A model generated the notes under the pieces. That model ran no database searches, was not told where the DNA came from, and saw nothing but the letters and a program-made list of their open reading frames with translations. 64,000 nt of DNA from Haliotis rubra (taxonomy: Eukaryota), in contig NW_025767102.1 of assembly GCF_003918875.1 (NCBI RefSeq), positions 744,001 to 808,000 of the forward strand. The letters are read 5' to 3'. Positions 4,611 through 61,959 of the stretch are shown one piece after another. A program made the translations under genes and the position numbers. Each line of letters starts with the position of its first letter. Position 1 is the stretch's first letter.

Positions 4611-7600
4611 ATGGCCGGACCGGTTGGTGCCTGGCCCGTGATTCTGCATCAGTCGCTGGAGAAGAGCGAAATCAGTCGACTTCTGCGACAAAAGAACTTC
4701 AAAATTCGAAGTAAGTGAGTCCTTAGTCATTAAGTAATTCCCGTGCGACCATGTTGAGGAACTCTGGGGAGGAGAACGCCCACATATGTATGCGTGTGTG
4801 TGCGTTCGTTCGTTCGTAAGTTGTTCAGGTTTCATAGTGCTTTCCTACAACTTATCATGTTTAACATGTCTCGGACACACAGTAGTGACAACAATCCGAC
4901 CAGTTTTGTTTTATACCCTCAATACAGTGTGCCAGGCAGGATAACAACATTAAATACCATGATGAAGCCAGGGAGTCGAACCACCCACATTTCCATCACT
5001 GCCAGACGCTCTGTCCACAAGACCAGACTGACGGTAATTGAAAGTCAGGGATGTGCCTGACAAAAATTCGCGCCTACTTGGAAATCAGTCATATCACTTA
5101 ACTATAATGTGCATTACATATTCTTTAAAGATTCAGAGAGCGTCACCAGCAACAGCATCATCTTCCCCATGTCGGGTGTTGCTTTTATGATCCTAGACCT
5201 CAAAGACGTCATCAGGGACAGCCCCGAAGGCGGCACCAGGACAGAGGTGTGGGAAAGGTGGGGCCGCTTGATGTCATCAATATAGTTTCTTCCTAGCAGC
5301 TGATTCTAAATCCGCATGACATATGCGTCAGGTTTATATCATAAGCACAAATGATATAGTATACTTTACTGGTGTGCATAGAAATATAGGCAAGTGTATA
5401 TAGAGCTTGAGCACTTGTGATAAACGTGTATGACATGTAAAGTGATAAATATATAGAGTCAAAATACAGTAATATATTCATCATCATATGGAAGGGGCGT
5501 AAATCTATAATGTAATGCACAAGTACTGACGGTACACCTATTCTATTTTGTATATACATGTATATGCATTTCTTCTAAACTGGAGATACTAATGAGAATT
5601 GTTACTCCGTGGTGGCTTTATACCCACTATATACTGTGTTACCCCTGTGGACATGATTCAGTGAATGTTACACAGTGTTTCATGGAATCAGTGTAGTTTT
5701 GCTGTTTTCTTTCATCAAGTATTGACAAGTTCGTACAAGTACACCGTCGCTGTTACATCCTGGCTCAAGCTCCATGCCATGCTGAACAGGAACAGTGTGT
5801 CTTCTCCGCCATACAAGAGAAGTAAGTGTTAAAATGTTATGGATAATTTAACACTTGTTTGATAAGCACATTTACCCCGACCTTCCTATTACATGGGTCC
5901 AAGGTTAATGTCCATGATATGATACGTACATGTTTTATTCTCGGTATCCATACAAAATGATAAACTGCTAAAATATTACTTATTACTCTTTCAGTGACCC
6001 CCGAAAGGTCAGTCAAGCATTACCAAAATAAAAATATATCTTTTTCTTTTGAAATTGCTCTTATAGTTATAGTCGAGAAGTTTCGTAATAATGTGTATCA
6101 CGATACGTATCGTATCATTAGGAAATTAACCTACTGTGTTTTGAAATTAGAGGTAGTATAACGGAATTATGATAGCTCTAAATTTAATTTAAAACCGAAC
6201 GCATGTCGGTAGTGTGATAAAGGTTAACCTGATTGTATGACTGAGATAGAGTGTTTGATATCTAATTATTGCTACCTTGCAAAATTTAAGAGTTGAGGCG
6301 CTTTTGCTGAGATGAGGAGTCCGAGTTGTACAAATTTAGAGACTGTTAAAGTGTGTGCCCTGTCAACTTCAGAATTTCACGCACCTCTACGACTGCATGT
6401 GACAGAAGACTCACTGTGGTGCATGGCTCTTACACGCTCATTTGTGTACTTTGTGCTAAAATTCGATTCTTCCCATATCATTTTCAATATTCTGGAAAGT
6501 GTGTTGTGATCTAGTGGCTTCCAAGTGGACAAAATTCATATCGTGATACATATGGTATTGTGACGTATGTATGTGATACATATGGTATTCTCGTATATCG
6601 TGATGCTTTGTATGGTGACCTATATATCGTATCGTATTGAGACCGTACTGCAGCCTTTCACTCTTACTTATGCCTATAGTGGTTAGAGCGTCCGCCCGGA
6701 GAGCGGAAGGTCGCGGGTTCGATCCCCGGCCGCGTCTTACCAAAAGACATAAAAACATGGTACTTGTTGGTCCCTGCCTGGCGCTCGGCATTAATGGGTA
6801 CAACAAGGACTGGTCGGCTCGGAGTCAGTATAATGTGTCTGAGTGGGGTATTCATGCTTCACTGCAGCATGGTATCTCAGTGGGCTAGCACTATAAAACC
6901 AGCTTCAGTCTGGGCTAGTACAAGCAGCCGCACATACACATACACAGGCATGCACGTCGTCATATCAGCGAAATATTCTCAAGCACGACGTTAAACCCAA
7001 TTTCACCTCACCTCACTTATACCTATAATAAAGTCGTACAGGAGACGTTGGCTTTGACTACGTCCTTCCGATTTCCAGGCTATTCATCCAAGGATGACAC
7101 TTTGCATACATCAACACCAAATAACAGTATTTTATGGTAAGCATGTTGGCTGTGGGTATTCACTTAACCTTTCCATTTCCCCAACTGACTAGGCTGGAAA
7201 CATGTATTTGCACGAGCCCTAAAGTCTGATTAGCTGTCAGCCCAGCCAATTCTCTGTGGCAGGAGATATCGATGAACGTGTCTTCTTGTCATGCCGAGAG
7301 ATGACTGCTATTTACTAACGCTTTCGAGTAACAAACAGCAGTGGTATATTTTACATGGACAACATGTTTTATTTGTACAAGATGTTTGGTCCCGTTATTA
7401 TTCTGTGTATCCATCATTCAAAGATATCAGTTGCGGTCTCAGTGTTCAGGCCATCCAAACAGCTAGCACACCGACTGTGCTACGTCTAATTATTGACTAG
7501 TTGGACCCGTGAAGATCCCGGTTACAATTGGCGTTCTGCAACACATACATTGTATTTGTTGTAAGAAGCGACTAACGGAATCGGGTGGTCAGGCTCACTG

Positions 7601-10600
7601 ACTTGGTTGACAAATGTCATCGTATCCCAAGTGGGTAGATCGACGCTCATGATGTTGATCACTGGATAATCTGGTCCAGCCTCATTAATTTACAGACCGA
7701 AGCCATATAGCTGGAATATTGCTGAGTGCAGCATAGAACTAAACTCACTCACTCACTACTATTCATGTGTTTTATTGCGTTTCAGATATATGACGAGTCC
7801 TCTACAAATGATCCCAGTCCACACGCCTACAGAGAGCATCCAAGCTATGTTGAACATTGCCAAGGTATTGTCTTATGAGTAGTTGATCTCTTTGAATCGC
7901 TAGCAAACTTTGACTGTGGGCTTGAATCCCACGTTCACCATGATAATGTGTTAAGGTTTGGCAGTACCGGAGAAGTGCATGTGAGTTAGTAGACCAGAGG
8001 TACAGATAAGCTGCGTATCGGCGTAAATTACGCAAATAATTATGTGAAAACGTAATTCCTTTTCTACAAGTACGCTTGAATGTTTGTAAATACTCTATAA
8101 ATTTGATCTTACATGCGTACACACAAAAATAGATAAAATAACAGGTATATTGAGAGGGTCTATGTGAGCACTTGAACTTGGCAACTTGCATTCTTTCTTT
8201 TCGTATCTCATATTACAGATCAAATATAAATAACAACATGTAAACCAACATTTAAGCTATATTATAGTTTTACAATAAATGGAAAATTGCAAAATGCCCA
8301 AATGAGATTGAGCGAGGTGGGTACAATTTATTTGGTTACCCATAGGAAAATTAAGATACCAAATCGAGATGAACACAAGCGAGTACATTACTCAGTGACC
8401 AAAAGGTTATCTGTAACTCTGTAGACCTACATTGTTCCGGCGTTCTCTCAAATCAAACTGACACCCAGTGATGTGACTGGAATGCTGTTCAAAGCAACGT
8501 TAAGCCAAACTTACAACAAAACTTACTCTCACAGTGAGTGAGTGAGTTTCGTTTTACACACACTCAGCAATATTCCAGCTATATGACGGCGGTCTGTAAA
8601 TAATCGAGTCTGGACCAGACAATCCAGTGATCAACATCATGAGCATCCATGTACACAATTGGGATACGATGACATGTGCCAACAAAGTCAGCGAGTCTGA
8701 CCACCCGATCCTGTTAGTTGCCTCTTACAAGCATGGGTTACTGAAGATCAATTCTGACCCGGATCTTCAGGGGTTACTGACACAGAGACAATGGTCATGT
8801 AAAGTATGATTAGGGCTGATGAATTTGGTCTGTAAATAATTAAATCTTGGTTAGACCATACCAGTGGTTGAAATTATGATCAACACAGCTGGGATACCAT
8901 GACATGCATCACCTATTTTAAATATACAACAACAAAAGCTAAATCTATCATATACATGTATAAATTCAATAAATGAATAAATGTAATTTGAAAGATGTTT
9001 ACTGTTGCAATACAAACATCTTTGGGGCGTGGGGTAGCCTAGTGGTTAAAGCCCTCGCTGTTTACGCTGAAGACCCGTGTTCGTGTTCGAAGCCCATTTC
9101 TGGTATCCCCTGTCGTGATATTGCTGAAACATTGCTAAAAGCGGCGTAAAACCATACTCACTCACTTTGAAATTTACATCTCTGCTCCTTAACGAATAAT
9201 TATTAGGGCTGTGCAATATAAACGGTTTACTGGTATTTACCGGTTCAGACATGAAAACGATACGTATTGCGATACGCTGATTGAAAACCGGTATTTTGAC
9301 ATGCATTCGGAAAACGTCGTAACACTCGGAAATCTTCGGATATTTCCTTGTTTCATTTGTGCCAAATATTATTCACATTTTTATTTTATCATGATTAAAA
9401 AAAGTTATTAAAGCTTAATCAAGCATAGTGATTTTGTTGTGTTTTTGCTCTATAAATCAAGCAGTAACTCGATTATAAGTAGTTTTTTGTTTAAAACTAC
9501 TTCATGCAAAATATTGCAATGCATATCGCAATACATGCTTTCGCATCGCCATATATCGCAATATGAATATTCTCTGCAATACCCACCCCTAATAATTATA
9601 ATAAGTAGCTTTATGACTAAGCAGTCTCCGACAGTGTTTATCCGTACCGTGTTCCTAGACGAAAGGCTGCAGTAATGGGAATCCTGTTTAATAAAATAAC
9701 ATTATTGACGCACATTTACCGCATCAAGTATAGGTGTCCCCAGGTGGTTTCTAGTAAAAGCTGATGTCGCTAGAAGCTGTGAATGCCTGACTCTGACTAG
9801 ACTGCGCGTCGTCGTATACCGCGCACACGGGACGTTATCATAACATCAAACTCAGGTTTGTCTGGAAGGCCATCGTTATTCAGCTGGAATATCAAGAACT
9901 GCGGCGTTAAACAAACAGCGAAAGAGTGGACTGTTTGACCAAGCCACTTGTGTTGGTACCACGGTCTTCTCTCCATCACAGCCGTAGTCACAGCTTGTAG
10001 GCTGTGTGGAGCTGGGATACAGTAACTTATTTACTTCATGTGCCAGTATATTCTAGACAGCATGAGTGAGTGAGTTTAGTATTACGCCGCTTTTAGCAAT
10101 ATTCCAGCAATATCACGGCGGGGGATACCAGAAATGGGCTTCACACATTGTACCAATGTGCGGAATCGAACCCGGGTCTTCGGCGTGACGAACGAACGAT
10201 TTAACCACTGGGTTACCCCACCGCCCCTAGACAGCATGAAGATCAGGTGAGGACAGATCTTGGTTGTCGTTATACTCAAAAACCCACGCACCCCACTCAC
10301 TCACTCACTCACTCATGAATCTGTACACCAATGTCCCCCTCTCAGTTAGACACCTAGGGCTGTGGGGTAGCCTAGTGGTTAAAGCCTTCGCTCGTCACGC
10401 TGAAGACCCGGGTTCAATTCCCCAAATGGGTACAAAAAATGTGTGAGGCTGATTTGTGGTGTCCCCCGCCGTGATATTGCTGGAATTGTACTAAGAGTGG
10501 CGTAAAATCAAACTCATTCATTCACACATCTGAACTCAAACCTTAACAACTCAACAATTATGTCTCCATCGACCAATCCTCTCATTCACCGAACCCGTAG

Positions 10601-13600
10601 AGATCTGGATTAGAATAAATTATTGGTCTTTAGCAAAACATGCTTATCGTAAGAGGCAACTATTGGTATCTGGTGATAGGCTCACTGACTTGACTGATGG
10701 TGTCATGGTATCCCAGCTGTGTACATCAATGCCTATTACATCAATTACTGGGCTGTCGGGACGAAACTCGATTATTTACAGACCGCTGTTGCTATTGTGA
10801 CCAACAAACAAACAATTACACAGCATTTTCTGCTGAACTTACTACGAGTAAAGACATTGTTCAAGGGCAATAGCTATTTTGATTATTTTTCTCTATATAT
10901 ACAAAGGCAAATAGAACATCAGCCTGGGTGGCTTATGTACCAGTTGGTATAGTGTGTAACTGTAACTGCATGTTACTTTGATGGGTAAAATGTATTCCTT
11001 TGTTTAATATAGGAGTACTGGAAAATCTTAAGTGTACATGTAAAGTACTGAATGGAAATTAATTGACTATCAGTAATTTGTGTTTCGTTTCATGTATGCA
11101 TCACAACATTGATTCTTGTGTAAACAGGTCAATGAACAATAAAACAAGACTTTTTCAGATAAATACGTTTGTAAATGATTCTAAGACCGTACACCATTGC
11201 TGTGGTGCGTATTTGCTACGTTTTCTAAATTATTTCCTACCGTATCGTGCATATTTTTTATTCGTACATACGCCGATACGGCCCTTATCTGGAGCCCTGT
11301 TCTATATATTAAGCGTATCTTTTAAGCCACTTCGAATTTGAAAATTTGACAGGTATGGAATCCAAGTTCGAAACCTGTACATTGACATCAGGCATGTCAA
11401 TTGGGATATAGATCTTTTAGAGGTATCGAACGTGACCAGTTATTGAATTGAATATTGATCTTTTGTTCATAATAAATAAACTGTGAAAGAAATAAAATCG
11501 AACATGTTCTTTTTTCAGTTATTGTGTAAGCCAATGGGAGAAGTTGTGACAAGGCGATTCCAAGGTCTCCTCACCCAGCAGTTGTCAGGGGACGTCACGG
11601 GCGCCGCCCTGACTCAACTGGGCCTCACTGAACCCCGTATCCTTCAGCTTACAATGCAGTGATGGAAGGAGGCTAGACTAACGCCTAATCTCTGGATATA
11701 TACTCACCCATCAAAAGTTTAGACTCACTAGTGTAAAATGTAGCCACTTACTTCAGTCAACTGTTCTAAACTAGATTTTGCAAAATATTCTGTACAGTTT
11801 ATGGGTACTGTTTACACATGAACTGACGTATTGTAAAACAAATTCGTAACGTTGAAAAGATTATTGTCATGAGTTCAATAAATGATGAAACTCAGTGAAA
11901 ATTGGCGAAATCTTAACAAAACTTTACACCAAAACGTAGCTGTTCACATGCACGATATTTGCACATGCTTTTCAGCAATTTGATGCATGAGCCTCGTGCA
12001 ATTCATCTGCATATAGTGTGTGCTTTAAGTGAGTCTAAACTTTTGATGGGTAGTATATATAATTCTGATAGAAACAAATAATTCATTTCAAGTTGAAAAG
12101 GAGCATCATACAGTGTGATGGGAGATTCAGAACCCGAGGAAATCTAGACTTGCCTCATTTGGGGCTTTATCATTGCAGAAAGGTATTGGCGGAAGGGAAT
12201 ATAATGCGGTTCGGGTTCGGGGTCTTTGAGACAGACAAGAAGGAAACCTGTACAGCCAAAGGTGAACTATTTCACGGACTAGAGGTTGTGGCCCTTTAAG
12301 GACAGTGTTTCGGTTCCAACACAGACAGATATAATATTCGAGTCTCCAGAATATATACAGTTGTCATTACACGTCGTTAAAGCGTGCAGAGGCCATTCCA
12401 TCGGGATTAGGGGCGGTGGGGTAGCTTAGTGGGTAAAGCGTTGGCTCGTCACGCCGAAAACCCGGGTTCGATTCCCCACATGGGTTCAATGTGTGAAGCC
12501 TATTTCTTGTGTCCACCGCCGAGATATTGCTGGAATATTGCTAAAAGCGGTATTAAGCTAAACTCACTCACTCTAAACGCCATTCAAAGACAAGAGCTTA
12601 AATGTCAACATGTTTTACAATAATACATGCCTTCTGACTTGAGTACCCCTCGGTGTGAAGCGTGAAAATAGCACAATATTACATGATGGTTTCTTAAACA
12701 ACTTCGATCATAAAACGTCAGATTTCAGATCCTGTTAGGTACAGATGTTTCAGGACCACGTGTCTTATTTATGTTTTGTGCACTTATCCCTATTTCGAGT
12801 TATTTAATCATTCATTGTTCTCATTTGAACCCGAACGGACTATGTGTACACGAGTCTATAGCACGCGCACGCACAAACCACTTCATAGATGTATTGCAAA
12901 GGTATTCCTCTTCCTTATCCTCATCAGAGATTCAGTCTATCCTTATCCTCATCAGAGATTCAGTTTATCCTTATCCCCATCAGAGATTCACTCTATCCTT
13001 ATCCTCATCAGAGATTCAGTCTATCCTTATCCTCATCAGAGATTCAGTTTATCCTTATCCTCATCAGAGATTCAGTTATCCTTATCCTCATCAGAGATTC
13101 AGTTTATCCTTATCCCCATCAGAGATTCAGTTTATCCTTATCCTCATCAGAGATTCAGTTTATCCTTATCCCCATCAGAGATTCAGTTTATCCTTATCCC
13201 CATCAGATTCAGTTTATCCTTATCCCCATCAGAGATTCAGTTTATCCTTATCCCCATCAGAGATTCAGTTTATCCTTATCCCCATCAGAGATTCAGTTTA
13301 TCCTTATCCTCATCAGAGATTCAGTTTATCCTTATCCCCATCAGAGATTCAGTTTATCCTTATCCTCATCACAGACTCAGTTTATCCTTATCCCTATCAG
13401 AGATTCAGTTTATCCTTATCCCCATCAGAGATTCAGTTTATCCTTATCCCCATCAGAGATTCAGTTTATCCTTATCCCCATCAGAGATTCAGTTTATCCT
13501 TATCCCCATCAGAGATTCAGTTTATGCTTTTCCTCATCAGAGATTCAGTCTATCCTTATCCTCATCAGAGATTCAGTTTATCCTTATCCTCATCAGAGAT

Positions 13601-13724
13601 TCAGTTTATCCAGGATGGAATAGGGAACCTGGCACAGCTGGCGACCGCCTCTCGAGACGATCTCCTCAACTGCAGTCTAGATACAGACACTGCAGACAGA
13701 ATACTGGACATGTTTCATAAATAG
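4611..13724 (+). CDS. C1orf146: SPO16/C1orf146 (SCRE) homolog, meiotic ERCC1-like partner of SHOC1. Exons 4611-4710, 5131-5257, 5720-5821, 7786-7864, 11519-11636, 13597-13724 (217 aa using the last acceptor)
   Basis: Spliced translation ...KIRNSESVTSNSIIFPMSGVAFMILD...IDKFVQVHRRCYILAQAPCH...LQMIPVHTPTESIQAMLNIAK matches, by recall, human C1orf146 ([24 protein letters not shown]...IEKFINIHQNSF...[21 protein letters not shown]). All exon phases are compatible; total 654 nt. Confidence 0.9.
6679..7016 (+). mobile_element. tRNA-derived SINE, family C (about 340 bp)
   Basis: tRNA-like head with B box GGTTCGATCCC, (CACCT)n tail, 13-bp TSD ACTTAT[G/A]CCTATA. A close copy lies at about 60946-61300 (-). 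Confidence 0.85.
7503..7757 (+). mobile_element. SINE family B, full length
   Basis: Starts GGACCCGTGAAGATCC and ends GCTGGAATATTGCTGAGTGCAGC plus (ACTC)n. Confidence 0.85.
8533..8775 (-). mobile_element. SINE family B, full length
   Basis: Same consensus body and tail on the reverse strand. Confidence 0.85.
9023..9166 (+). mobile_element. SINE family A, internally deleted
   Basis: GGGGTAGCCTAGTGGTTAAAG head and shared tail. Confidence 0.8.
9204..9591. mobile_element. hAT-like MITE
   Basis: TAGGG...CCCTA termini, 8-bp TSD ATAATTAT on both sides, subterminal CGATAC/GCAATA motifs. Confidence 0.7.
10064..10524. mobile_element. Two family A SINEs in inverted orientation: 10064-10227 (-) and 10357-10524 (+)
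   Basis: Both have A/B boxes; the first has TSD CTAGACAGCATGA. Confidence 0.85.
11701..12055. mobile_element. Tc1/mariner-like MITE inside the U12 intron
   Basis: About 28-bp TIRs TACT(C)ACCCATCAAAAGTTTAGACTCACT / AGTGAGTCTAAACTTTTGATGGGTAGTA, flanked by TA. Confidence 0.8.
12410..12572 (+). mobile_element. SINE family A
   Basis: A box, B box GGTTCGATTCC and shared tail. Confidence 0.85.
12911..13610 (+). repeat. 28-bp minisatellite (CCTTATCC[C/T]CATCAG|AGATTCAGTTTAT), 25 units, made of the SPO16 3' splice site
   Basis: Acceptor positions recur every 28 nt from 12927 to 13596, with one -1 unit, one -2 unit and one AG>AC variant at 13372. Confidence 0.95.
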
Positions 13725-15109
13725 GCCGCTGTGTGATCAGTGATAAGCTGTATTTGTCTCATGTTTATTTAAAGTGGAACTAGGCTCCGGTCAATTGGCA
13801 GCCTTGAGGTTAGATTCAAGATCGTCACATCTCACTTAATCTGTCTGCAAGCTTAAATTGTGTGATGCTGATCGATCCGGCTGTCAGAACGTACCATTAT
13901 TACACGGACACAATGACCTTCATACACAGCACATATTTCAACATCAAGGCGTTGCATGATCATGGAGTGGGGACCTTTCCTCAAGTCACTGTCAAAGTTG
14001 TACAGAATAAACGGCTTCCATGGATGAAATATTGTTTTGTGTTTGTCAGATACTGCAGTCAGAAAAATTCCAGCTACGTGGCGGCGGTCCCTAGGTTTTG
14101 TGTCTGAGCCAGACAATGCAATGATTGCAAACTTATCATCGATCAACACAACTGATATGAGATGACATGCGAGTCTAACCACCCCGTCCACTTAGTCGCA
14201 TAGGACTGATGTGGGTTTGCGTGGAATTTATTTTCTGAACTTTTTCTGAGCTCTGTAACGAATGTAGTCATGAATTCGTGGTTTAGGATAAGCCCTAAAT
14301 GGAAAAATGTTTTGCGACTTACTCTAAGTTTAAGTCCTTTGAAACAGATGAGAACTGGAGGAAGATTTGTATTACATTTTATTGGTGAAAAGCAGACATG
14401 TCTTCGAAGAATTCTGAAACCGGTGTTCGCACGCAGTAAAGGTAACTCATTTGAGTTAACACTCGGGCAGATTTGTATTACATTTTTAATGAAAATCTTA
14501 CCATCGCGGCTTTTATCTGATTTCAAACTTTCCCTATGACTCATTTTCACTTTAATCTTAGTTACTAATCACTCCCGAACACACAGCTTACCAAACAACA
14601 TCTTCCAGCGGAAGCTCGTCCACTCAAGAACTGTCAGAAACTCTTGCATAAATACAGCTGTAAAGGTTCCCAGTGGACACGACGTCATGGCGTCGATTGG
14701 ACTTTCTTTCAGGTGTACAGAATATGCATTACGACTTTTGAAACATATGAGCTATTTCCAAGTTAGTATTCTTAAACCGCTTCCAAGTATTTCGAGTTAA
14801 AGAGTTTTCTGTGGGATTATTGTATCTATATTCTTGCTTATGGGTTAAAGCTGATACAGCACCGCGTCAATACGGCGCCAGGCTAGCGTAAAAAACCTTG
14901 GTTTGACAAAAAGGCTTCGGTGCGTGCTTCCTACGTACACGTATATACAGAAGACAGAATTCCACGACAGTATAAGTACGTCATATATTTTGCAATAGGT
15001 CGTCACACATCTAAGTGAGTGAGTTAACATCTTACGTTGCATCAACAATTTTGCGACTCCACACCTGAGAAATCAGATAGTATACCAACCCTTACCATAA
15101 TTACCAGTC

Positions 15110-21402: not shown

Positions 21403-37211
<15,809 letters not shown>

Positions 37212-43800: not shown

Positions 43801-46800
43801 GACTCAGGGTATTGGTATAAACGAAGCTATCAGTGGTAGTCTCGGGGTAGTGGAAGACATATGGTAGACATATGGTAGACACAGGGTAGTATTAGACTAA
43901 ATACTCAATAAATGTCTGTTTTTTTATATGTATATGCTAAATCTCATTGCATCATCATGGTAATACTATCAGAACAAGTCTAAAATGACCATAGTGAGTG
44001 TCAATCTCTGACTAGACTGGCATTTTGGAGAATTTAAAGCAATATCTGAGCAAATCAAATATTGTATCTTGTTTCAATCATCGCCGTATGTACAATGAGA
44101 TGAGCCTCTTGTGGAAGCTCCAGGGTATGACTTATGTCCTATAGGTTCAATGATGGGAAGTTCTACGTGCAGGCTGTTCAACTCAAACATCGGGTGCCAT
44201 CATTTGGGTTCTCTGTACAGGAGGCACCACAACCAGGCAGGTATGAACACTGATGATAGGCTGTCAAGTTCTTGTGTGTATATCTCTTTAGGCTGTCAAG
44301 TTCTTGTGTGTATATCTCTTTAGTCTGTCAAGTTCTTGTGTGTATGTCTCTTTAGGCTGTCAAGTTCTTGTGTGTATATCTCTTTAGGCTGTCAAGTTCT
44401 TGTGTGTATATCTCTTTAGGCTGTCAAGTTCTTGTGTGTATATCTCTTTAGGCTGTCAAGTTCTTGTGTGTGTCTTTAGGCTGTCATATCTTGTGTGTAT
44501 AGGCTTTAGGCTGTCAAGTTCTTGTGTGTATATCTCTTTAAGGCTGTCAAGTTCTTGTGTGTATATCTCTTTTGGCTGTCAAGTTCTTGTGTGTATATCT
44601 CTTTAGGCTGTCAAGTTCTTGTGTGTATATCTCTTTAGTCTGTCAAGTTCTTGTGTGTATATCTCTTTAAGGCTGTCAAGTTCTTGTGTGTATATCTCTT
44701 TAGGCTGTCAAGTTCTTGTGTGTATATATCTTTAGTCCTGCAATACAAGAATAATTAACAAAACAGACATGGCAAATTATTCAGATAACTTTAAGAGTGA
44801 CAAAATAAATACTACAACACATTTTTTTATGATAATATCACCTGCAATTGCATTTTGAAAATATGTTTGTTCCAGGTTCGATGTCCAGGCCGCCAAGGCT
44901 AGGGGAATTCCAGCTGGGCCCCTGTACTCTAAGCTCAAGTCTGGGGAAGCAGTTGTCCTCGAAGATGGAACTAAGGTATTGATGGTGTCTGACATGGCTT
45001 ATAACCAGTCATAAAACGATGCTCAGTTTCTATGAGGACTGTTATACATAGAGGTGTGACGATACAGAAATTTCACGATACGATACGATACGCGATATCT
45101 TGGAACGATACGATTCGATTCGATGCATATCACGATATGCTTTCTTTAGTTATTTTCTTTAAAAAAATCATATTTTAATAGCAAGAAATATTGACATAAC
45201 CGTCAATATCTAATGAAAATTAACAATTTTAAGGTCAACGATACATGTCACGATACGAAAAATGTATCGATATATTTATCGTCAGATAAAGTATCATGAT
45301 TATAGATACTACAATATATCGTCACAGCTCTAGTTATACATCAGTCATGCAGCTGTTTATGCCTGTACTGAGGGTAGGAATACAGATTACAGCAGTCAAT
45401 GCTTGTCATCAGAAGCAGCTGAATGAATCAGCATGGGGTTGTGGTTGGCATGTCATTGTGGTCCCATCATTGTGTCCAAAGTCTGTGGATCAGTAGTCTT
45501 CATATATTGTCTGTTTGCAACTGTTACTTACAGACCACCATCTTATTGCGGGAATGATGTTGAACGGTATTGTTAAGCAACAAACAAATAAACAAACACA
45601 CATAAAAGTGAGTGAGTGAGTGAGTTTAGTTTTATGCCGCTTTTAGCAATTTTCCAGCTATATCATGGCGGGGGACACCAGAAATGGGCTTCACATATTG
45701 TACCAATGTGGGGAATTATATAAGCAACAAGTTCATCTTATGTTAAGGCTATCATCTATCCAGTTATAGTTCAGCACTCCCATTAATTTCGGGATGTATT
45801 ATGATCAGTTATTCTTCACATATTATGCTGGCCCGACTTTTTGTGCAGGTAGACGCTAGTGAGGTGGTCGGACCATCACGACCTGGACGCCACATCCTGG
45901 TGATGGGGGACACTAGTGACACCTCCGAGCTGGTCAAGGTGGGGCGAGGAGCAGACGTCCTCGTACATGAAGCAACACTGGAGAACGCTTTGTGGGAGAA
46001 GTGCTTGGAGAATGGTCATTCCACTCCAGGTGAGCCTTAGATATTACGATTTTTAAGATTCATCTTCATCTTATGTAGACATGTAATGATATGAGCAGCA
46101 TAAAACTAAACTCACTCTGATGAACAAGTGGTCATATTTGTTTTGTATTGCAAACTTGCCCTCATTTGTTTGTGTGTTTTGTGTGTCTCCTAGCAATGGC
46201 GGCAGAGGTGGCACAGCAGCTGGATGTAGGACAACTCATACTCACCCACTTCAGCCAGAGATACAGGCCGTTATCTTATGATGCCCAGGTTCGTATATGC
46301 AGTCAAACCACCTTATCTTTATCTCAGATTTCTCGAATCACTTGTTGTATTGAACTCCCAATCCAGTCTGGCAAACTCCTTGTGTATTTACCAATATTGT
46401 AACCAGATATGTCGAAATGGACAGGTCAAATTTTCGGTTATTCCAAAAATGAACTTCAGTCAAAAGAGATCCTGAAATTGTGTGTAAATGTGCCCGAATA
46501 AATTGTTGGTCAAGTTTTCAGTTTCTGTCTGGTCCAGGTTCTTGTCCTTACCATGTACTATGTCACCTACCTGTCCAGTGATCGTAAGATGCAACTAACA
46601 GGATATCATCATATCCCGGGTTAGAATTGGTCTTCAGTAACCTATGCTTGTTGTAAGAAGCAATGTCACATGTCATCATATCCCAATTGCGTAGATTAAT
46701 GCTCATGCTGTTGATCACTGGATTGTCTGGTCCAGACTTGATTATTTACAGACTATCACCATATTGCTGGAATGTTGCTGAGTGCAGCATTAAACAACAA

Positions 46801-46989: not shown

Positions 46990-47083
46990 TACATGACTAA
47001 TGACTTACCTCTGTCATAGCATGACCAGTCATCTATAAGTGATGATCTGATCCATTCTGTCTGGAGTTGGTGTCAGTGATAGT

Positions 47084-47545
47084 GACACAGGCATGTTGTT
47101 AGAAGGCCTCTATTGGTGATGTTTGTGATGGTGTCATGATAACACAGGCATGTATGACTGAAGATCTTTATTGGTGATGTTTGTGATTATGTCATTGGTG
47201 ACACAGGCATGTATGACTGAAGGTGTCTGTTGGTGATGTTTGTGATTATGTCATTGGTGACACAGGCATGTATGACTGAAGGTCTCTGTTGGTGATGTTT
47301 GTGATTATGTCACTGGTGACACAGGCATGTATGACTGAAGGTCTCTGTTGGTGATGTTTGAGATGGTGTCACTGGTGACACAGGCATGTATGACTGAAGG
47401 TCTCTGTTGGTGATGTTTGTGATTATGTCATTGGTGACACAGGCATGTATGAGTGAGGGCCTCTATTGGTGATCTTTGAGATGTTGTCATTGATGACACA
47501 GGCATGTATGACTGAAGATCTTTATTGGTGATGTTTGTGATGTTG
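47084..47545. repeat. 59-bp minisatellite, about 8 units, just downstream of the ELAC1 stop codon
   Basis: Unit TGACACAGGCATGTATGACTGAAGGTCTCTGTTGGTGATGTTTGTGATTATGTCATTGG. Confidence 0.9.
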
Positions 47546-53133: not shown

Positions 53134-54109
53134 ACATGTGTATTTGAACACTGGTCACACATAAACATGTGTAATAACGTTCAACACATATACTAACTAA
53201 TTGAAAATCACCGTATTTTCATGCCACGAATGATAGCTTTATCGTGGTAGGAGATTCCATGTGTTTGTTGGTTGGATGGTGAACGCCGAACTCGGAACTT
53301 TCCAGAAAAATGTTAGATTGACATGTGAATGCAGTAGCCAAGGAATAATAGAGAAAAGCGTTTGAAGCCAGTTACTGTTATCTCCCGCTTCGGTTTAGAT
53401 GGAATATCGCTGAAAGCAGCGTACCTCACTCACTCAAATGTATAAAATATGACCCCCTCACGTCCTCACCCCCTCACCCTCCCGCCGGGGATCGTTGCTG
53501 ACAATATCGACCACTATATTGTCAGATCAAGACTCGATTATTCACGGTTATATGGCACGAATATGTCTGGGTGAGGTGTTAAACAACAACCAATACCATA
53601 AAACCAGGTATGCTGCAGTGTCGTAACTTTATTTTCAAAGTTAAAGTAAAGAAGGATGCTTCGTTGAAGAAAAAATAGACAACAAACTTCAAACCTGATT
53701 TATTTGAAACTTGTAACAATCAAATGCTTGTGAATACGGTGTGCATGTTCTTACACAAAAGGATTTGACTCCAATCTGTGAAAACAAAACAAAAGATTAA
53801 TGGTCAATAGGACGTGAAACAGGAAAATATTGTTTTGATCAAAGACTTCGTGTTTGGGTATCCTGATGTTAACAACTTTGTATTAATACATTTAGCCCTT
53901 CACCATTATTGGATTTTCTGGTTTGGTTAAGTGCCGCCGTCATGGAGGCGTTGATCTGTAAATACTTCCAACATTGATCGAACTGTGTCTGTGGTAGGGA
54001 ACACCATGCTAAACCTATTGGCGATCTCCTGGTGTCATCACCGATTCCGTGGTCCATTCACCACTAGTCTGCCCAAATGAAAATTATGTGTCATGTTACG
54101 GGTAACGTA

Positions 54110-55115
54110 ACAGCAATGGCAATGTGGCAGTGGTGTACCGTGTTACTGACATTACAAGGTGTCGTTACAGCAGGTGCACTCTGGCAGTTGTGTACCATGG
54201 TACGGACATTACAAGATGTCGTAACAGAAGGTGCAATGTGGCAGCTATGTATCATGGTACGGACATTACAAGATGTCGTAACAGAAGGTGCAATGTGGCA
54301 GCTATGTATCATGGTACGGACATTATAAGATGTCGTAACAGAAGGTGCAATGTGGCAGTTATGTACCATGGTACGGGCATTACAAGATGTCGTAACAGAA
54401 GGTGCAATGTGGCAGCTATGTACCATGGTACGGACATTACAAGATGTCGTAACAGAAGGTGCAATGTGGCAGCTATGTATCATGTTACGGCCATTACAAG
54501 ATGTCGTAACAGAAGGTGCAATGTGGCAGCTATGTATCATGGTACGGACATAACAAGATGTCGTAACAGAAGGTGCAATGTGGCAGTTGTGTACCATGGT
54601 ACGGACATTACAAGATGTCGTAACAGAAGGTGCAATGTGGCAGCTATGTATCATGGTACGGACATTACAAGATGTCGTAACAGAAGGTGCAATGTGGCAG
54701 CTATGTATCATGGTACGGACATTACAAGATGTCGTAACAGAAGGTGCAATGTGGCAGCTATGTATCATGGTACGGACATTATAAGATGTCGTAACAGAAG
54801 GTGCAATGTGGCAGTTATGTACCATGGTACGGGCATTACAAGATGTCGTAACAGAAGGTGCAATGTGGCAGCTATGTAGCATGGTACGGACATTACAAGA
54901 TGTCGTAACAGAAGGTGCAATGTGGCAGCTATGTACCATGGTACGGACATTACAAGATGTCGTAACAGAAGGTGCAATGTGGCAGCTATGTACCATGTTA
55001 TGGACATTACAAGGTGTCATTACAGCAGGTGCGTTGTGGCAGCTATTTTTAATTACCATGGTATGGACATTACAAGATGTCGTAATAGAAGTTGCAATGT
55101 GGCAGTTGTGTACAT
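54110..55115. repeat. 57-bp minisatellite, about 17 units, downstream of the lectin copy 2 stop codon
   Basis: Unit GTGCAATGTGGCAGCTATGTATCATGGTACGGACATTACAAGATGTCGTAACAGAAG. Confidence 0.95.
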
Positions 55116-56542
55116 GGAATAAATAAGGTATTTGGCTTAAGTTACGGACGTTACTGTCTCAGAGAGGAAACATGGAATAAAGGGGTATTGGGTTTCAGCT
55201 TCTGGCGTTACTTACTCTCTCTCACAAAGGAAGTACATTCGGTCTGTGCAGGGAGCGTCGTTCCACTCGTAGCTATCTGAAGTCATAAGCGCCAAGCAGT
55301 CCTCCGTGACGGAGCTGCCACTGCCGGCGTTGTTGGGCTCCCCAGGTTTCCAGTTGCTGTATTGTATACGGTCCAAAGTGTTGGTCCACAGCCACTCCTG
55401 GTTCACCAAGAGGTCGGACCCACCAAGCCAAATGTCCAGCGTTAGGTGGCCTACAGGTAAAGCAACCAGACTGAGAGTGGAAATAAACGCCGCTTGGAAC
55501 AGTATCTCGGTAACTGTACGACGTTGACTTCATACAGACAGTTCGGTTTAACGCATTTTGTAGACATTACGGTTACAGTTGATTTTTGGAAGAAGTTGAA
55601 ATTCTATATATTTTGATGATAGAATTTGTTTGGCTTTAAGTATTCAAAACAATGTAAAGTAAACTTGATATTTTTGAATTAATAGATCGATACGAATCTC
55701 AACCTTGCATTACCAACTCTCTGGTAAACACTACTTCTTGGTTCTGTAGCTTCAGAAGAACTGTTACAAGAACAAGATGTTAATATGGTTATGTGATATC
55801 GTCGATGTTCTGTTTGACAGAACATCCTTCTTTAAGCTTTTAGTAAGGTTCACACAGTTGGTATCTTATTACTATTGTGCAGTCCATTGATGTAACCCTC
55901 GATGAAGTTCTGTTCCTGTTGGTCCGTTATCATGGCAAGTCTCCCTCCAAAGCTTCCTACAGAAAACCTGTAGAAATAAATGCTGGTTATCTGTCATCAA
56001 ACGATGTTTTAAACATGTCAATAATCATTTTGTTTACCAAGTCGAGCCAAACTTATTTATGATCAAGATTTACGCACTGGGTGTTTCGAGAAAGAAAATA
56101 GTAAATTCAAATTAACTATAGTTACATGGCTAGACAGATTAACTACAGTTACCTGGCTCGACCAATTAACTATAGTTATACGTGTTATCGTTTCGAGTGT
56201 TATGATGCAATAACTGTCAGTGAAATTGGCTACAATGCCATACGGAAATCCACTGTAACCATGGTGATCTATTGATACATTTCCTTACCACAGATTCGGG
56301 CCACGTGGCCGCCAGGGGGAACATCTTGTAGCAGGACTCGCTGTAGAAGGCATACCCGTCGGGACAACTGCCACCCTGACCTGTGGAGATACAATAGGTA
56401 ATGCCTCCATCTAACAGAAACTACAGACACAAATGTTGGATGATCATACATTGAAATTCATTCTTAATTTTATTTTTCGGTGAACAAATAAGAACATTTG
56501 TACAGTGTAGTTTATAGAATTTCACCATAGCAACATCTATAC

Positions 56543-61801: not shown

Positions 61802-61959
61802 NNNNNNNNNNNNNNNNNNNNNNNNNNNNNNNNNNNNNNNNNNNNNNNNNNNNNNNNNNNNNNNNNNNNNNNNNNNNNNNNNNNNNNNNNNNNNNNNNNN
61901 NNNNNNNNNNNNNNNNNNNNNNNNNNNNNNNNNNNNNNNNNNNNNNNNNNNNNNNNNNN
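61802..61959. other. Assembly gap (158 N)
   Basis: Run of N. Confidence 1.

What the first reader, a model, noticed from the sequence alone, without database searches (positions are those of the whole stretch)
11637..13724. A minor-spliceosome 3' splice site amplified 25 times: a minisatellite of acceptors gating the last SPO16 exon
Seen: the final intron begins GTATCCTTC (U12 donor). The 28-bp unit is exactly branch-like CCTTATC + C[C/T]CATCAG + the first 13 exon bases AGATTCAGTTTAT. The shared TTATCC in the branch site and the exon start offers the microhomology for slippage. There are 25 acceptor positions from 12927 to 13596 (24 AG, one AC). The first has the best branch context (TTCCTTATC); only the last gives the compact protein (...LTEP-QIQFIQDGIGNL...). 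Nine positions (12927, 13011, 13122, 13206, 13260, 13344, 13428, 13512, 13596) are in frame with the terminal domain; the others shift frame and lose it. Known: U12 acceptor choice depends on a branch site a short distance from the AG; SPO16-SHOC1 promotes meiotic crossovers. Inference: repeat copy number could tune the amount or length of functional SPO16, a VNTR-based splicing rheostat on a recombination gene.
Basis: partly seen in the sequence, partly recalled or inferred. Interest (0 to 1): 0.9.

Follow-up and report, generated by a model that had tools for sequence, protein, structure and literature searches.

The report
Amplified minor-intron acceptor in abalone SPO16
In the blacklip abalone, the 28-base signal that ends an ancient minor-spliceosome intron of the meiotic gene SPO16 has been copied 25 times in a row; the array is real, but it is most likely a tolerated by-product of a genome full of such repeats, and no RNA data could be reached to show that it regulates splicing.

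Summary
Window 12912-13611 is a 28-bp x 25 tandem array. Each unit holds a U12-like branch motif (TCCTTATC), a CAG acceptor and the first 12-15 bases of the last SPO16 exon.

The gene is Haliotis rubra SPO16 (Pfam PF15162, XPF/ERCC1-like fold). Its terminal intron is U12-type at the same position and phase in Haliotis, Gigantopelta, Lingula and a soft coral, with AT-AC/GT-AG switching.

H. rufescens has exactly one copy of the unit, so the array is a lineage-specific amplification of the real 3' splice site.

What the array does remains untested. Every reachable run was genomic DNA. Indirect evidence favours the last acceptor (13596) as the working one:
- it is the annotated junction;
- only it keeps the (HhH)2 domain intact;
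- the last exon has dN/dS of about 0.1;
- only it is followed by purine-rich exon sequence.

About 10% of this window is minisatellite, so a chance hit on a splice site is plausible. The "rheostat" idea is unsupported, not refuted.

The scan also holds unverified notes of similar arrays on other pieces of this genome (s1-344812, s1-344962).

The parts
11519..11636 (+). SPO16 exon 5 (118 nt, ends in phase 1, ...LTQLGLTEP)
   Evidence: The exact exon model reproduces protein P0001. tblastn mapping agrees.
11637..11645 (+). U12-type 5' splice site GTATCCTTC
   Evidence: Sequence. The identical donor occurs in H. rufescens. Gigantopelta has ATATCCTTC, Lingula ATATCCTTA and Dendronephthya GTATCCTTT at the same position and phase.
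11637..13596 (+). Terminal intron as annotated (1960 nt; 1291 nt if the first acceptor were used)
   Evidence: The H. rufescens orthologue is about 807 nt long.
11706..12051 (.). MITE-like insertion inside the intron, with perfect 24-nt terminal inverted repeats
   Evidence: the repeat finder. Very high contig depth and 'opposite strands' joints appear in all four runs. H. rufescens has no match to this stretch.
12370..12583 (+). tRNA-derived SINE inside the intron
   Evidence: Rfam tRNA hit at 12421-12479, while ARAGORN finds no tRNA gene. Summed contig depth is about 1e6-1e7.
12912..13611 (+). 28-bp x 25 minisatellite. Each unit is TCCTTATC (U12 branch-like) + C[C/T]CATCAG (acceptor) + AGATTCAGTTTA (exon start).
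   Evidence: Every unit aligns to the single 31-bp segment L002:7300-7330 of H. rufescens.
12911..12927 (+). First copy. It is the only one that keeps the ancestral TTCCTTATC context, and its acceptor at 12927 is in frame (669 nt, or 223 codons, upstream of 13596).
13052..13078 (+). 27-bp unit (one T missing), which shifts the frame register of the acceptors upstream of it
13191..13216 (+). 26-bp unit (AG missing after the CAG)
13357..13384 (+). Unit 17: CAC in place of CAG, plus GACTC
13525..13552 (+). Unit 23: degenerate branch motif TGCTTTTC, so the third-last acceptor probably has no working branch site
13581..13596 (+). Last copy: branch-like motif and the annotated acceptor, identical to the single H. 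rufescens copy
13597..13724 (+). SPO16 last exon, coding part (QIQFIQDG...MFHK, stop at 13722-13724). It encodes helices 2-5 of the C-terminal (HhH)2-like bundle.
   Evidence: dN/dS is 0.109 against H. rufescens.
13612..13641 (+). Purine-rich exon stretch (70% purine) found only downstream of the last acceptor; a candidate exonic enhancer (inferred)
   Evidence: +16..+45 is 70% purine here, against 30-40% after each of the 24 upstream acceptors.

Best explanation
Shown:
- The terminal intron of SPO16 is a U12-type (minor-spliceosome) intron conserved from cnidarians to molluscs.
- In the Haliotis rubra lineage, one 28-bp segment was tandemly amplified from one copy (the state kept in H. rufescens) to 25 copies. 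The segment spans the branch-site motif, the CAG acceptor and the first 12 exon bases.
- The breakpoints share only the 3-bp microhomology TCC.
- The amplification took place in a genome where minisatellites form very readily.

Inferred:
- Functional SPO16 mRNA is made by joining 11636 to the last copy (13596).
- That copy alone keeps the XPF/ERCC1-like (HhH)2 domain intact, and it alone is followed by the real, purine-rich exon.
- The 24 upstream copies are decoy U12 3' modules. They are mostly silent or produce a minority of aberrant isoforms, which would escape nonsense-mediated decay because they lie in the last exon.
- The array is therefore a neutral to mildly deleterious VNTR that could grow unit by unit because it lies in the intron relative to the site in use. 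It is not an evolved regulator.
For: - Array and counts.
- Gene identity: Pfam PF15162 at 30.1 bits against a cut-off of 27. NCBI names P0001 'protein SPO16 homolog [Haliotis rubra]'. The fold matches XPF, ERCC1, FAAP24 and Zip2:Spo16 over its full length.
- U12 character in five taxa at the same position and phase. The criteria come from review PMC3584512.
- Single copy in H. rufescens, with flanks orthologous up to both edges of the array. Seven units are identical to that copy.
- A 3-4% diverged relative (organism A) also carries at least 3 units between the same flanks.
- Evidence for the last acceptor: the annotated protein and all orthologues read ...|QIQ(F/M)..QDG. dN/dS is 0.089 for the gene and 0.109 for the last exon. 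The junction lies at the start of helix 174-183 of the (HhH)2 bundle, so any insert splits it. Only the last acceptor has purine-rich sequence downstream.
- The variant pattern shows growth in steps of 1-3 units, not only in-frame triplets. That is neutral only if the array is intronic.
- Six large minisatellites cover about 10% of this 64-kb window.
Against: - No transcript evidence exists here. All four runs laid were genomic DNA.
- From minus 16 to plus 15, several upstream copies are identical to the last one. The review states that U12 3' splice-site choice depends on branch-site distance and is error-prone. On local sequence alone, use of several acceptors is therefore expected.
- The first copy has one more base of branch-site consensus and is in frame.
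- The NCBI model may rest on protein homology rather than on RNA.
- The role of the purine-rich stretch as an enhancer is an inference.
- The Haliotis branch motif has T where the canonical branch A sits.
Confidence: 0.57

Rival explanations
1. Distributed acceptor use. The U11/U12 di-snRNP pairs the donor with many of the 23-24 intact branch motifs. A large share of SPO16 mRNA then carries 28-669 nt of array, two thirds of it frame-shifted. Array length sets how much intact protein is made.
For: The upstream copies are locally identical to the last one. No competing canonical branch motif exists elsewhere in the intron. U12 3' splice-site choice is set by branch distance and is described as error-prone (PMC3584512). 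Products would escape nonsense-mediated decay because the site lies in the last exon (established knowledge).
Against: The gene and its last exon are under strong purifying selection. Uniform use would leave about 4% native mRNA. Inserts would split the (HhH)2 domain. The single annotated isoform uses the last site. The genome's high minisatellite rate removes any need for a function. There are no RNA data either way.
Confidence: 0.28
2. The first acceptor dominates. The first copy (12927) has the full TTCCTTATC context, is nearest the donor and is transcribed first. It would be used predominantly, giving a roughly 440-aa SPO16 with a 223-residue low-complexity insert but an in-frame C-terminus.
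For: The first acceptor is in frame, and the array has no + strand stop codons. It has the best branch context.
Against: In-frame status has a 1/3 chance, and the absence of stops has p of about 0.16. The insert would fall inside the first helix-hairpin-helix. Growth of the array by single units would have passed through frame-shifting states. The annotation does not use this site.
Confidence: 0.07
3. Assembly artefact. The array, or its length of 25 with the 27-bp and 26-bp units, is an error of the Nanopore-based hybrid assembly, and the animal has one or a few copies.
For: The assembly is wtdbg/DBG2OLC Nanopore plus Illumina, polished with Racon and Pilon (PMC6774278). Short-read contigs break at the array, and the bins 13226-13439 have no depth. 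Organism A contigs show only 3-4 units.
Against: Short-read contigs of X3 carry array words at both ends, at 1-5 times single-copy depth. Contigs of another organism hold at least 3 units between the same flanks. A 700-bp array is far shorter than Nanopore reads. The unit variants are ordered and structured, not noise. A k=31 graph cannot count 28-bp units, so low contig counts prove nothing.
Confidence: 0.06

Closest known systems
U12-type (minor-spliceosome) introns, including AT-AC to GT-AG subtype switching
   Same: The donor is RTATCCTT. The branch motif lies 10-15 nt from the 3' end. The position and phase are conserved across phyla, with AT-AC in Gigantopelta and Lingula and GT-AG in Haliotis and Dendronephthya.
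   Different: I found no described U12 intron with its whole 3' recognition module tandemly repeated (paper searches found nothing). The Haliotis branch motif TCCTTATC has T at the canonical branch-A position.
Intronic or junctional VNTRs and minisatellites that can alter splicing (known in vertebrate genes; from my own knowledge)
   Same: It is a head-to-tail array of a 10-100 bp unit inside a gene, lineage-specific and probably variable in length.
   Different: Here the unit is the functional 3' splice site itself, in a minor-class intron, and every copy is a full candidate acceptor module. No effect on splicing has been shown.
Tandem alternative acceptors (NAGNAG) and disease-causing duplications of intron-exon junctions (major spliceosome; from my own knowledge)
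   Same: Duplicated acceptors a short distance apart compete for one donor, and frame consequences depend on the spacing.
   Different: Those cases have 2 copies and use U2-type scanning from a single branch point. Here each of the 25 copies brings its own branch motif, so the choice is made at branch-site pairing.
USSE: the tandem U12 5' splice-site repeat that regulates the U11-48K and U11/U12-65K genes (PMC3584512)
   Same: It is a tandem repeat of a minor-spliceosome recognition signal inside a gene.
   Different: USSE is a conserved two-copy 5' splice-site element with a proven feedback function. This is a young 25-copy array of the 3' module, absent from a congener, with no shown function.

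Membership tests
U12-type intron | Highly conserved 5' splice site [A/G]TATCCTT at the intron start | tested here: met
   GTATCCTTC lies at 11637. The same or an AT-variant is found in four orthologues. The other four introns of the gene have ordinary GT donors.
U12-type intron | Branch-point sequence close to TCCTTAAC | tested here: inconclusive
   Haliotis has TCCTTATC, a 7/8 match with T at the canonical branch-A position. Orthologues have CCTTGAC or TCCTTAAT. There is no canonical motif elsewhere in the intron. No intronIC-type score could be run.
U12-type intron | Short branch-to-3'ss distance (optimum 11-13 nt, PMC3584512) | tested here: met
   The A of TCCTTA lies at -11 in every unit. 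The branch A is at -11 in Gigantopelta and Lingula and at -15 in Dendronephthya.
U12-type intron | Orthologous conservation as U12-type across distant taxa | tested here: met
   The position and phase 1 are the same in five species from three phyla.
U12-type intron | Removal depends on U11/U12/U4atac/U6atac | not testable with these tools
   This needs minor-spliceosome knock-down or in vitro splicing.
SPO16 (Pfam PF15162, ERCC1-like partner of SHOC1/Zip2) | Significant match to the family profile | tested here: met
   Exon 2 alone scores 30.1 bits against a cut-off of 27. PF15162 is precomputed for P0001 and all orthologues.
SPO16 (Pfam PF15162, ERCC1-like partner of SHOC1/Zip2) | Nuclease-like domain followed by an (HhH)2 domain, the XPF/ERCC1 architecture | tested here: met
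   AlphaFold2 model with pLDDT 75.6. Foldseek gives full-length matches to XPF, ERCC1, FAAP24 and yeast Zip2:Spo16 at E 1e-7 to 1e-4. There is a weak sequence hit to the ERCC1 HhH2 domain at E 0.06.
SPO16 (Pfam PF15162, ERCC1-like partner of SHOC1/Zip2) | Binds SHOC1 and promotes meiotic crossovers | not testable with these tools
   This is known for mouse and yeast (PMC6357729, PMC6411835) and is not tested in abalone.
Minisatellite / VNTR | Head-to-tail array of a 10-100 bp unit | tested here: met
Minisatellite / VNTR | Copy number varies among individuals or close relatives | tested here: inconclusive
   H. rufescens has 1 copy. Organism A contigs show about 3 and about 4 units, but a k=31 graph collapses 28-bp repeats.
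Alternative 3' splice-site system / splicing rheostat | Transcripts that use two or more of the acceptors | not testable with these tools
   No RNA run was reachable. X1 and X2 proved to be genomic DNA. A search for protein fragments found nothing.

The most novel reading that the evidence does not exclude
The minor spliceosome really does spread its choice over many of the 24 extra branch/acceptor modules. A hypervariable minisatellite then sets the dose of intact SPO16, the ERCC1-like half of the SHOC1-SPO16 crossover complex. That would create heritable variation in crossover number or fertility among abalone. If the two other unverified scan notes (s1-344812, s1-344962) hold up, amplification of U12 3' modules would be a recurrent feature of this genome.
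Probability: 0.1. Interest if true: 0.8.

Novelty: new variant of a known kind. Interest (0 to 1): 0.42.

Why it matters
It is a clean natural experiment on a poorly understood step: how the minor spliceosome chooses among equivalent branch-site and 3' splice-site modules. One deeply conserved U12 donor faces 25 near-identical modules. A congener with a single module serves as the control, and the frame read-out is unambiguous within 16 nt of the junction. If the upstream copies are silent, it shows that context beyond ±15 nt decides U12 3' choice (exon enhancers, terminal-exon definition). If they are used, a VNTR modulates a meiotic crossover factor. Public gonad RNA-seq of this species should answer either question. 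As it stands, the array is a verified structural curiosity with no demonstrated function.

Tried and rejected
1. RNA evidence. Runs X1 and X2 came back under kind 'rna' with unknown type. Laid on 11300-14500, they proved to be genomic DNA, with contigs unbroken across the exon 5/intron boundary. Both run searches and the single read-laying run are spent.
2. Transcript-derived protein fragments that cross the junction. A search with the C-terminal 81 aa found nothing. P0001 is on one genomic contig only.
3. The H. rufescens isoforms X1 and X2 as a hint of alternative acceptors. Rejected: the 22-aa difference is at the exon 2/3 boundary.
4. 'No stop codons in the array means it is translated.' Rejected: only 17 of 84 possible substitutions create a stop, and with about 8 distinct variants p is about 0.16. 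'First acceptor in frame' has p = 1/3.
5. TTATCC microhomology as the cause of the 28-bp unit. Rejected: the two motifs are 22 bp apart, and the breakpoints share TCC.
6. A dispersed satellite or transposon as the source of the unit. Rejected for this window: there is no copy outside the array, and the unit equals the single-copy orthologous sequence, including conserved codons.
7. Literature listing SPO16/C1orf146 as a minor-intron gene, or describing amplified U12 acceptors. Nothing was found. The one search hit was unrelated.
8. Octopus SPO16 locus and H. rufescens isoform X2. Neither is on record.
9. The other scan notes on similar arrays could not be retrieved by sequence.
Full report
**1. 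Observation.** Tandem Repeats Finder reports one array at 12912-13611: period 28, 25.1 copies, 95% matches, score 1225.
- Cut in register, the array has 25 units: 23 of 28 bp, one of 27 bp (13052-13078) and one of 26 bp (13191-13216).
- The consensus unit occurs 23 times at up to 3 mismatches, only inside the array, against 0 in shuffles.
- Each unit reads TCCTTATC, then C(C/T)CATCAG, then AGATTCAGTTTA.
- The 25 CAG| positions run from 12927 to 13596. 24 end in AG and one in AC (13372).
- The + strand of the array has no stop codon in any frame.
- The donor GTATCCTTC begins at 11637.

**2. The gene.**
- The fragment 5061-5282 hits Pfam PF15162 'Protein SPO16 homolog' at 30.1 bits, above the cut-off of 27.
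- An exhaustive protein search returned P0001 (217 aa). It maps at about 100% identity onto six window exons, and NCBI names it 'protein SPO16 homolog [Haliotis rubra]'.
- The exact exons are 4611-4710, 5131-5257, 5720-5821, 7786-7864, 11519-11636 and 13597-13724.
- Introns 1-4 have ordinary GT donors. Only the last intron is U12-like.
- An AlphaFold2 model (pLDDT 75.6) shows an alpha/beta domain, a low-confidence linker and a C-terminal helical bundle.
- Foldseek matches the model over its full length to XPF, ERCC1, FAAP24 and yeast Zip2:Spo16.
- This agrees with the literature on SPO16 as the ERCC1-like partner of SHOC1/Zip2 in crossover formation (PMC6357729, PMC6411835).

**3. The intron is truly U12-type.** I fetched the orthologous loci and mapped the last two exons. 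At the same position, and always in phase 1, the signals are as follows.

| Species | Donor | Branch motif and 3' end |
|---|---|---|
| H. rufescens | GTATCCTTC | TTCCTTATCCTCATCAG |
| Gigantopelta aegis | ATATCCTTC | CCTTGAC, then 9 nt ending in AC |
| Lingula anatina | ATATCCTTA | CCTTGAC, then 9 nt ending in AC |
| Dendronephthya (soft coral) | GTATCCTTT | TCCTTAAT, then 13 nt ending in AG |

- The review PMC3584512 gives the defining features: conserved 5' splice site and branch sequence, no distinct pyrimidine tract, and a branch-to-3'ss optimum of 11-13 nt. It also notes that AT-AC to GT-AG switches occur.
- The donor motif alone is not rare in the window, at 3 found against 2.5 expected. 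The evidence lies in its position and conservation.
- One caveat: the Haliotis branch motif TCCTTATC has T where the canonical branch A sits. An A lies one base upstream, at -11, which is the same distance as the branch A in Gigantopelta and Lingula.

**4. Origin of the array.**
- H. rufescens has no 28-bp array and exactly one copy of the unit.
- The H. rubra left flank (12861-12942) and right flank (13581-14025) align to H. rufescens 7245-7330 and 7300-7738.
- Each of the 25 units aligns to the same 31-bp segment, 7300-7330.
- The exon-start residues QIQF/QIQM/EINL followed by QDG are conserved across molluscs. The exon start is therefore ancestral, and the array derives from it, not the reverse.
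- Seven units (2, 5, 7, 9, 15, 24, 25) are identical to the H. rufescens copy. Ten central units share a derived T>C.
- The breakpoints share only TCC.
- The rest of the size difference between the two introns (1960 against about 807 nt) includes a MITE-like insertion with perfect 24-nt inverted termini and a tRNA-derived SINE. H. rufescens has no match to either stretch.

**5. Independent reads.**
- All four runs laid on 11300-14500 are genomic DNA.
- X3 is nearly identical to the window. Its contigs hold array words at both ends of the array at one to five times single-copy depth, and one contig stops at 13582.
- Organism A is 2.6-4.5% diverged. Its contigs join 12817-12948 directly to 13535 or 13563 onwards, which leaves about 4 or about 3 units between the same flanks.
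- The unit (28 bp) is shorter than the assembler's word (31), so these counts are lower bounds.
- The amplification is therefore real and shared with a close relative. The number 25 rests on the Nanopore/Illumina hybrid assembly alone (PMC6774278).

**6. Which acceptor is used?** No RNA evidence could be reached. The indirect evidence favours 13596:
- It is the annotated junction, and it reproduces the conserved protein.
- dN/dS against H. rufescens is 0.089 for the gene and 0.109 for the last exon. In organism A, three of the four last-exon differences are silent and together the four change one residue, T to S. The terminal domain is therefore read in its conserved frame.
- The junction P175|Q176 lies at the start of helix 174-183 of the (HhH)2-like bundle. 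Even in-frame inserts of 28 to 223 residues would split the first helix-hairpin-helix.
- Only the last acceptor is followed by purine-rich sequence: 70% purine at +16..+45 against 30-40% for the others. The review lists work showing that purine-rich enhancers act in U12 splicing.
- The unit variants show growth in steps of one, two and three units. That is neutral only if the array lies in the intron relative to the site in use.

Against this:
- Several upstream copies are identical to the last from -16 to +15 or further.
- The first copy has one more consensus base.
- The intron has no other branch candidate.
- U12 3' splice-site choice is described as error-prone.
- Some use of upstream copies is therefore likely, and heavy use cannot be excluded.

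**7. Background rate.**
- This 64-kb window holds six large minisatellites with periods of 28-59 bp and about 8-50 copies each. They cover roughly 10% of the sequence.
- With arrays forming this often, an occasional array seeded on a splice site is expected without any function.
- The scan's other unverified notes on this genome fit that picture: two more 'amplified U12 branch point plus acceptor' arrays and one 'amplified donors' array. I could not examine them.
- The open frames of the array and the in-frame first acceptor are within chance.

**8. Comparison and verdict.**
- The intron meets the U12 tests I could run, and the gene meets the SPO16 tests.
- The array is a minisatellite made of a functional minor-class 3' splice module. 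I found no description of such a thing.
- It belongs to the known kinds 'junctional VNTR' and 'duplicated acceptor'.
The 'rheostat' is an untested idea with a low prior.
- Interest is moderate. It is a tidy natural experiment on U12 3' splice-site choice that existing gonad RNA-seq could settle.

Noticed in passing
window 11706-12051: A MITE-like element with perfect 24-nt terminal inverted repeats lies 70 nt downstream of the U12 donor. Contig depth is enormous in all four runs, including the other species.
   Followed up: partly
window 12370-12583: A tRNA-derived SINE: Rfam scores 12421-12479 as tRNA at 33 bits, while ARAGORN calls no tRNA gene. Summed contig depth of 1e6-1e7 suggests one of the most abundant repeats of the genome.
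   Followed up: partly
window 27665-29565, 30694-32678, 44257-44735, 47082-47541, 54106-55117: Five more large minisatellites with periods of 38, 40, 32, 59 and 57 bp and up to about 50 copies. With the SPO16 array they make up about 10% of the window. I did not check whether any of them lies in a gene.
   Followed up: no
L002 2434-2615 (H. rufescens): SPO16 isoform X1 carries 22 extra residues after exon 2, which tblastn reads straight on past the X2 donor. H. rubra exon 2 is 9 nt longer than its H. rufescens counterpart.
   Followed up: partly
L002 7225-7266 (H. rufescens) and window 12861-12880: An (ACGCAC)7 microsatellite sits about 40 nt upstream of the branch motif in H. rufescens. H. 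rubra keeps only a short remnant. The region next to the acceptor was already repeat-prone.
   Followed up: no
window 61802-61959: A run of 158 N (an assembly gap or masked stretch), left untouched.
   Followed up: no
other pieces of the same genome (scan notes s1-344812, s1-344962, s1-352195): First-stage notes describe two further tandem amplifications of a 'U12 branch point plus acceptor' and one array of splice donors. If real, splice-signal minisatellites recur in this genome.
   Followed up: no
P0010 (Logan contig of 1509 nt): An unnamed 238-aa SPO16 homologue on a short contig, probably a transcript of another invertebrate. I did not examine it.
   Followed up: no
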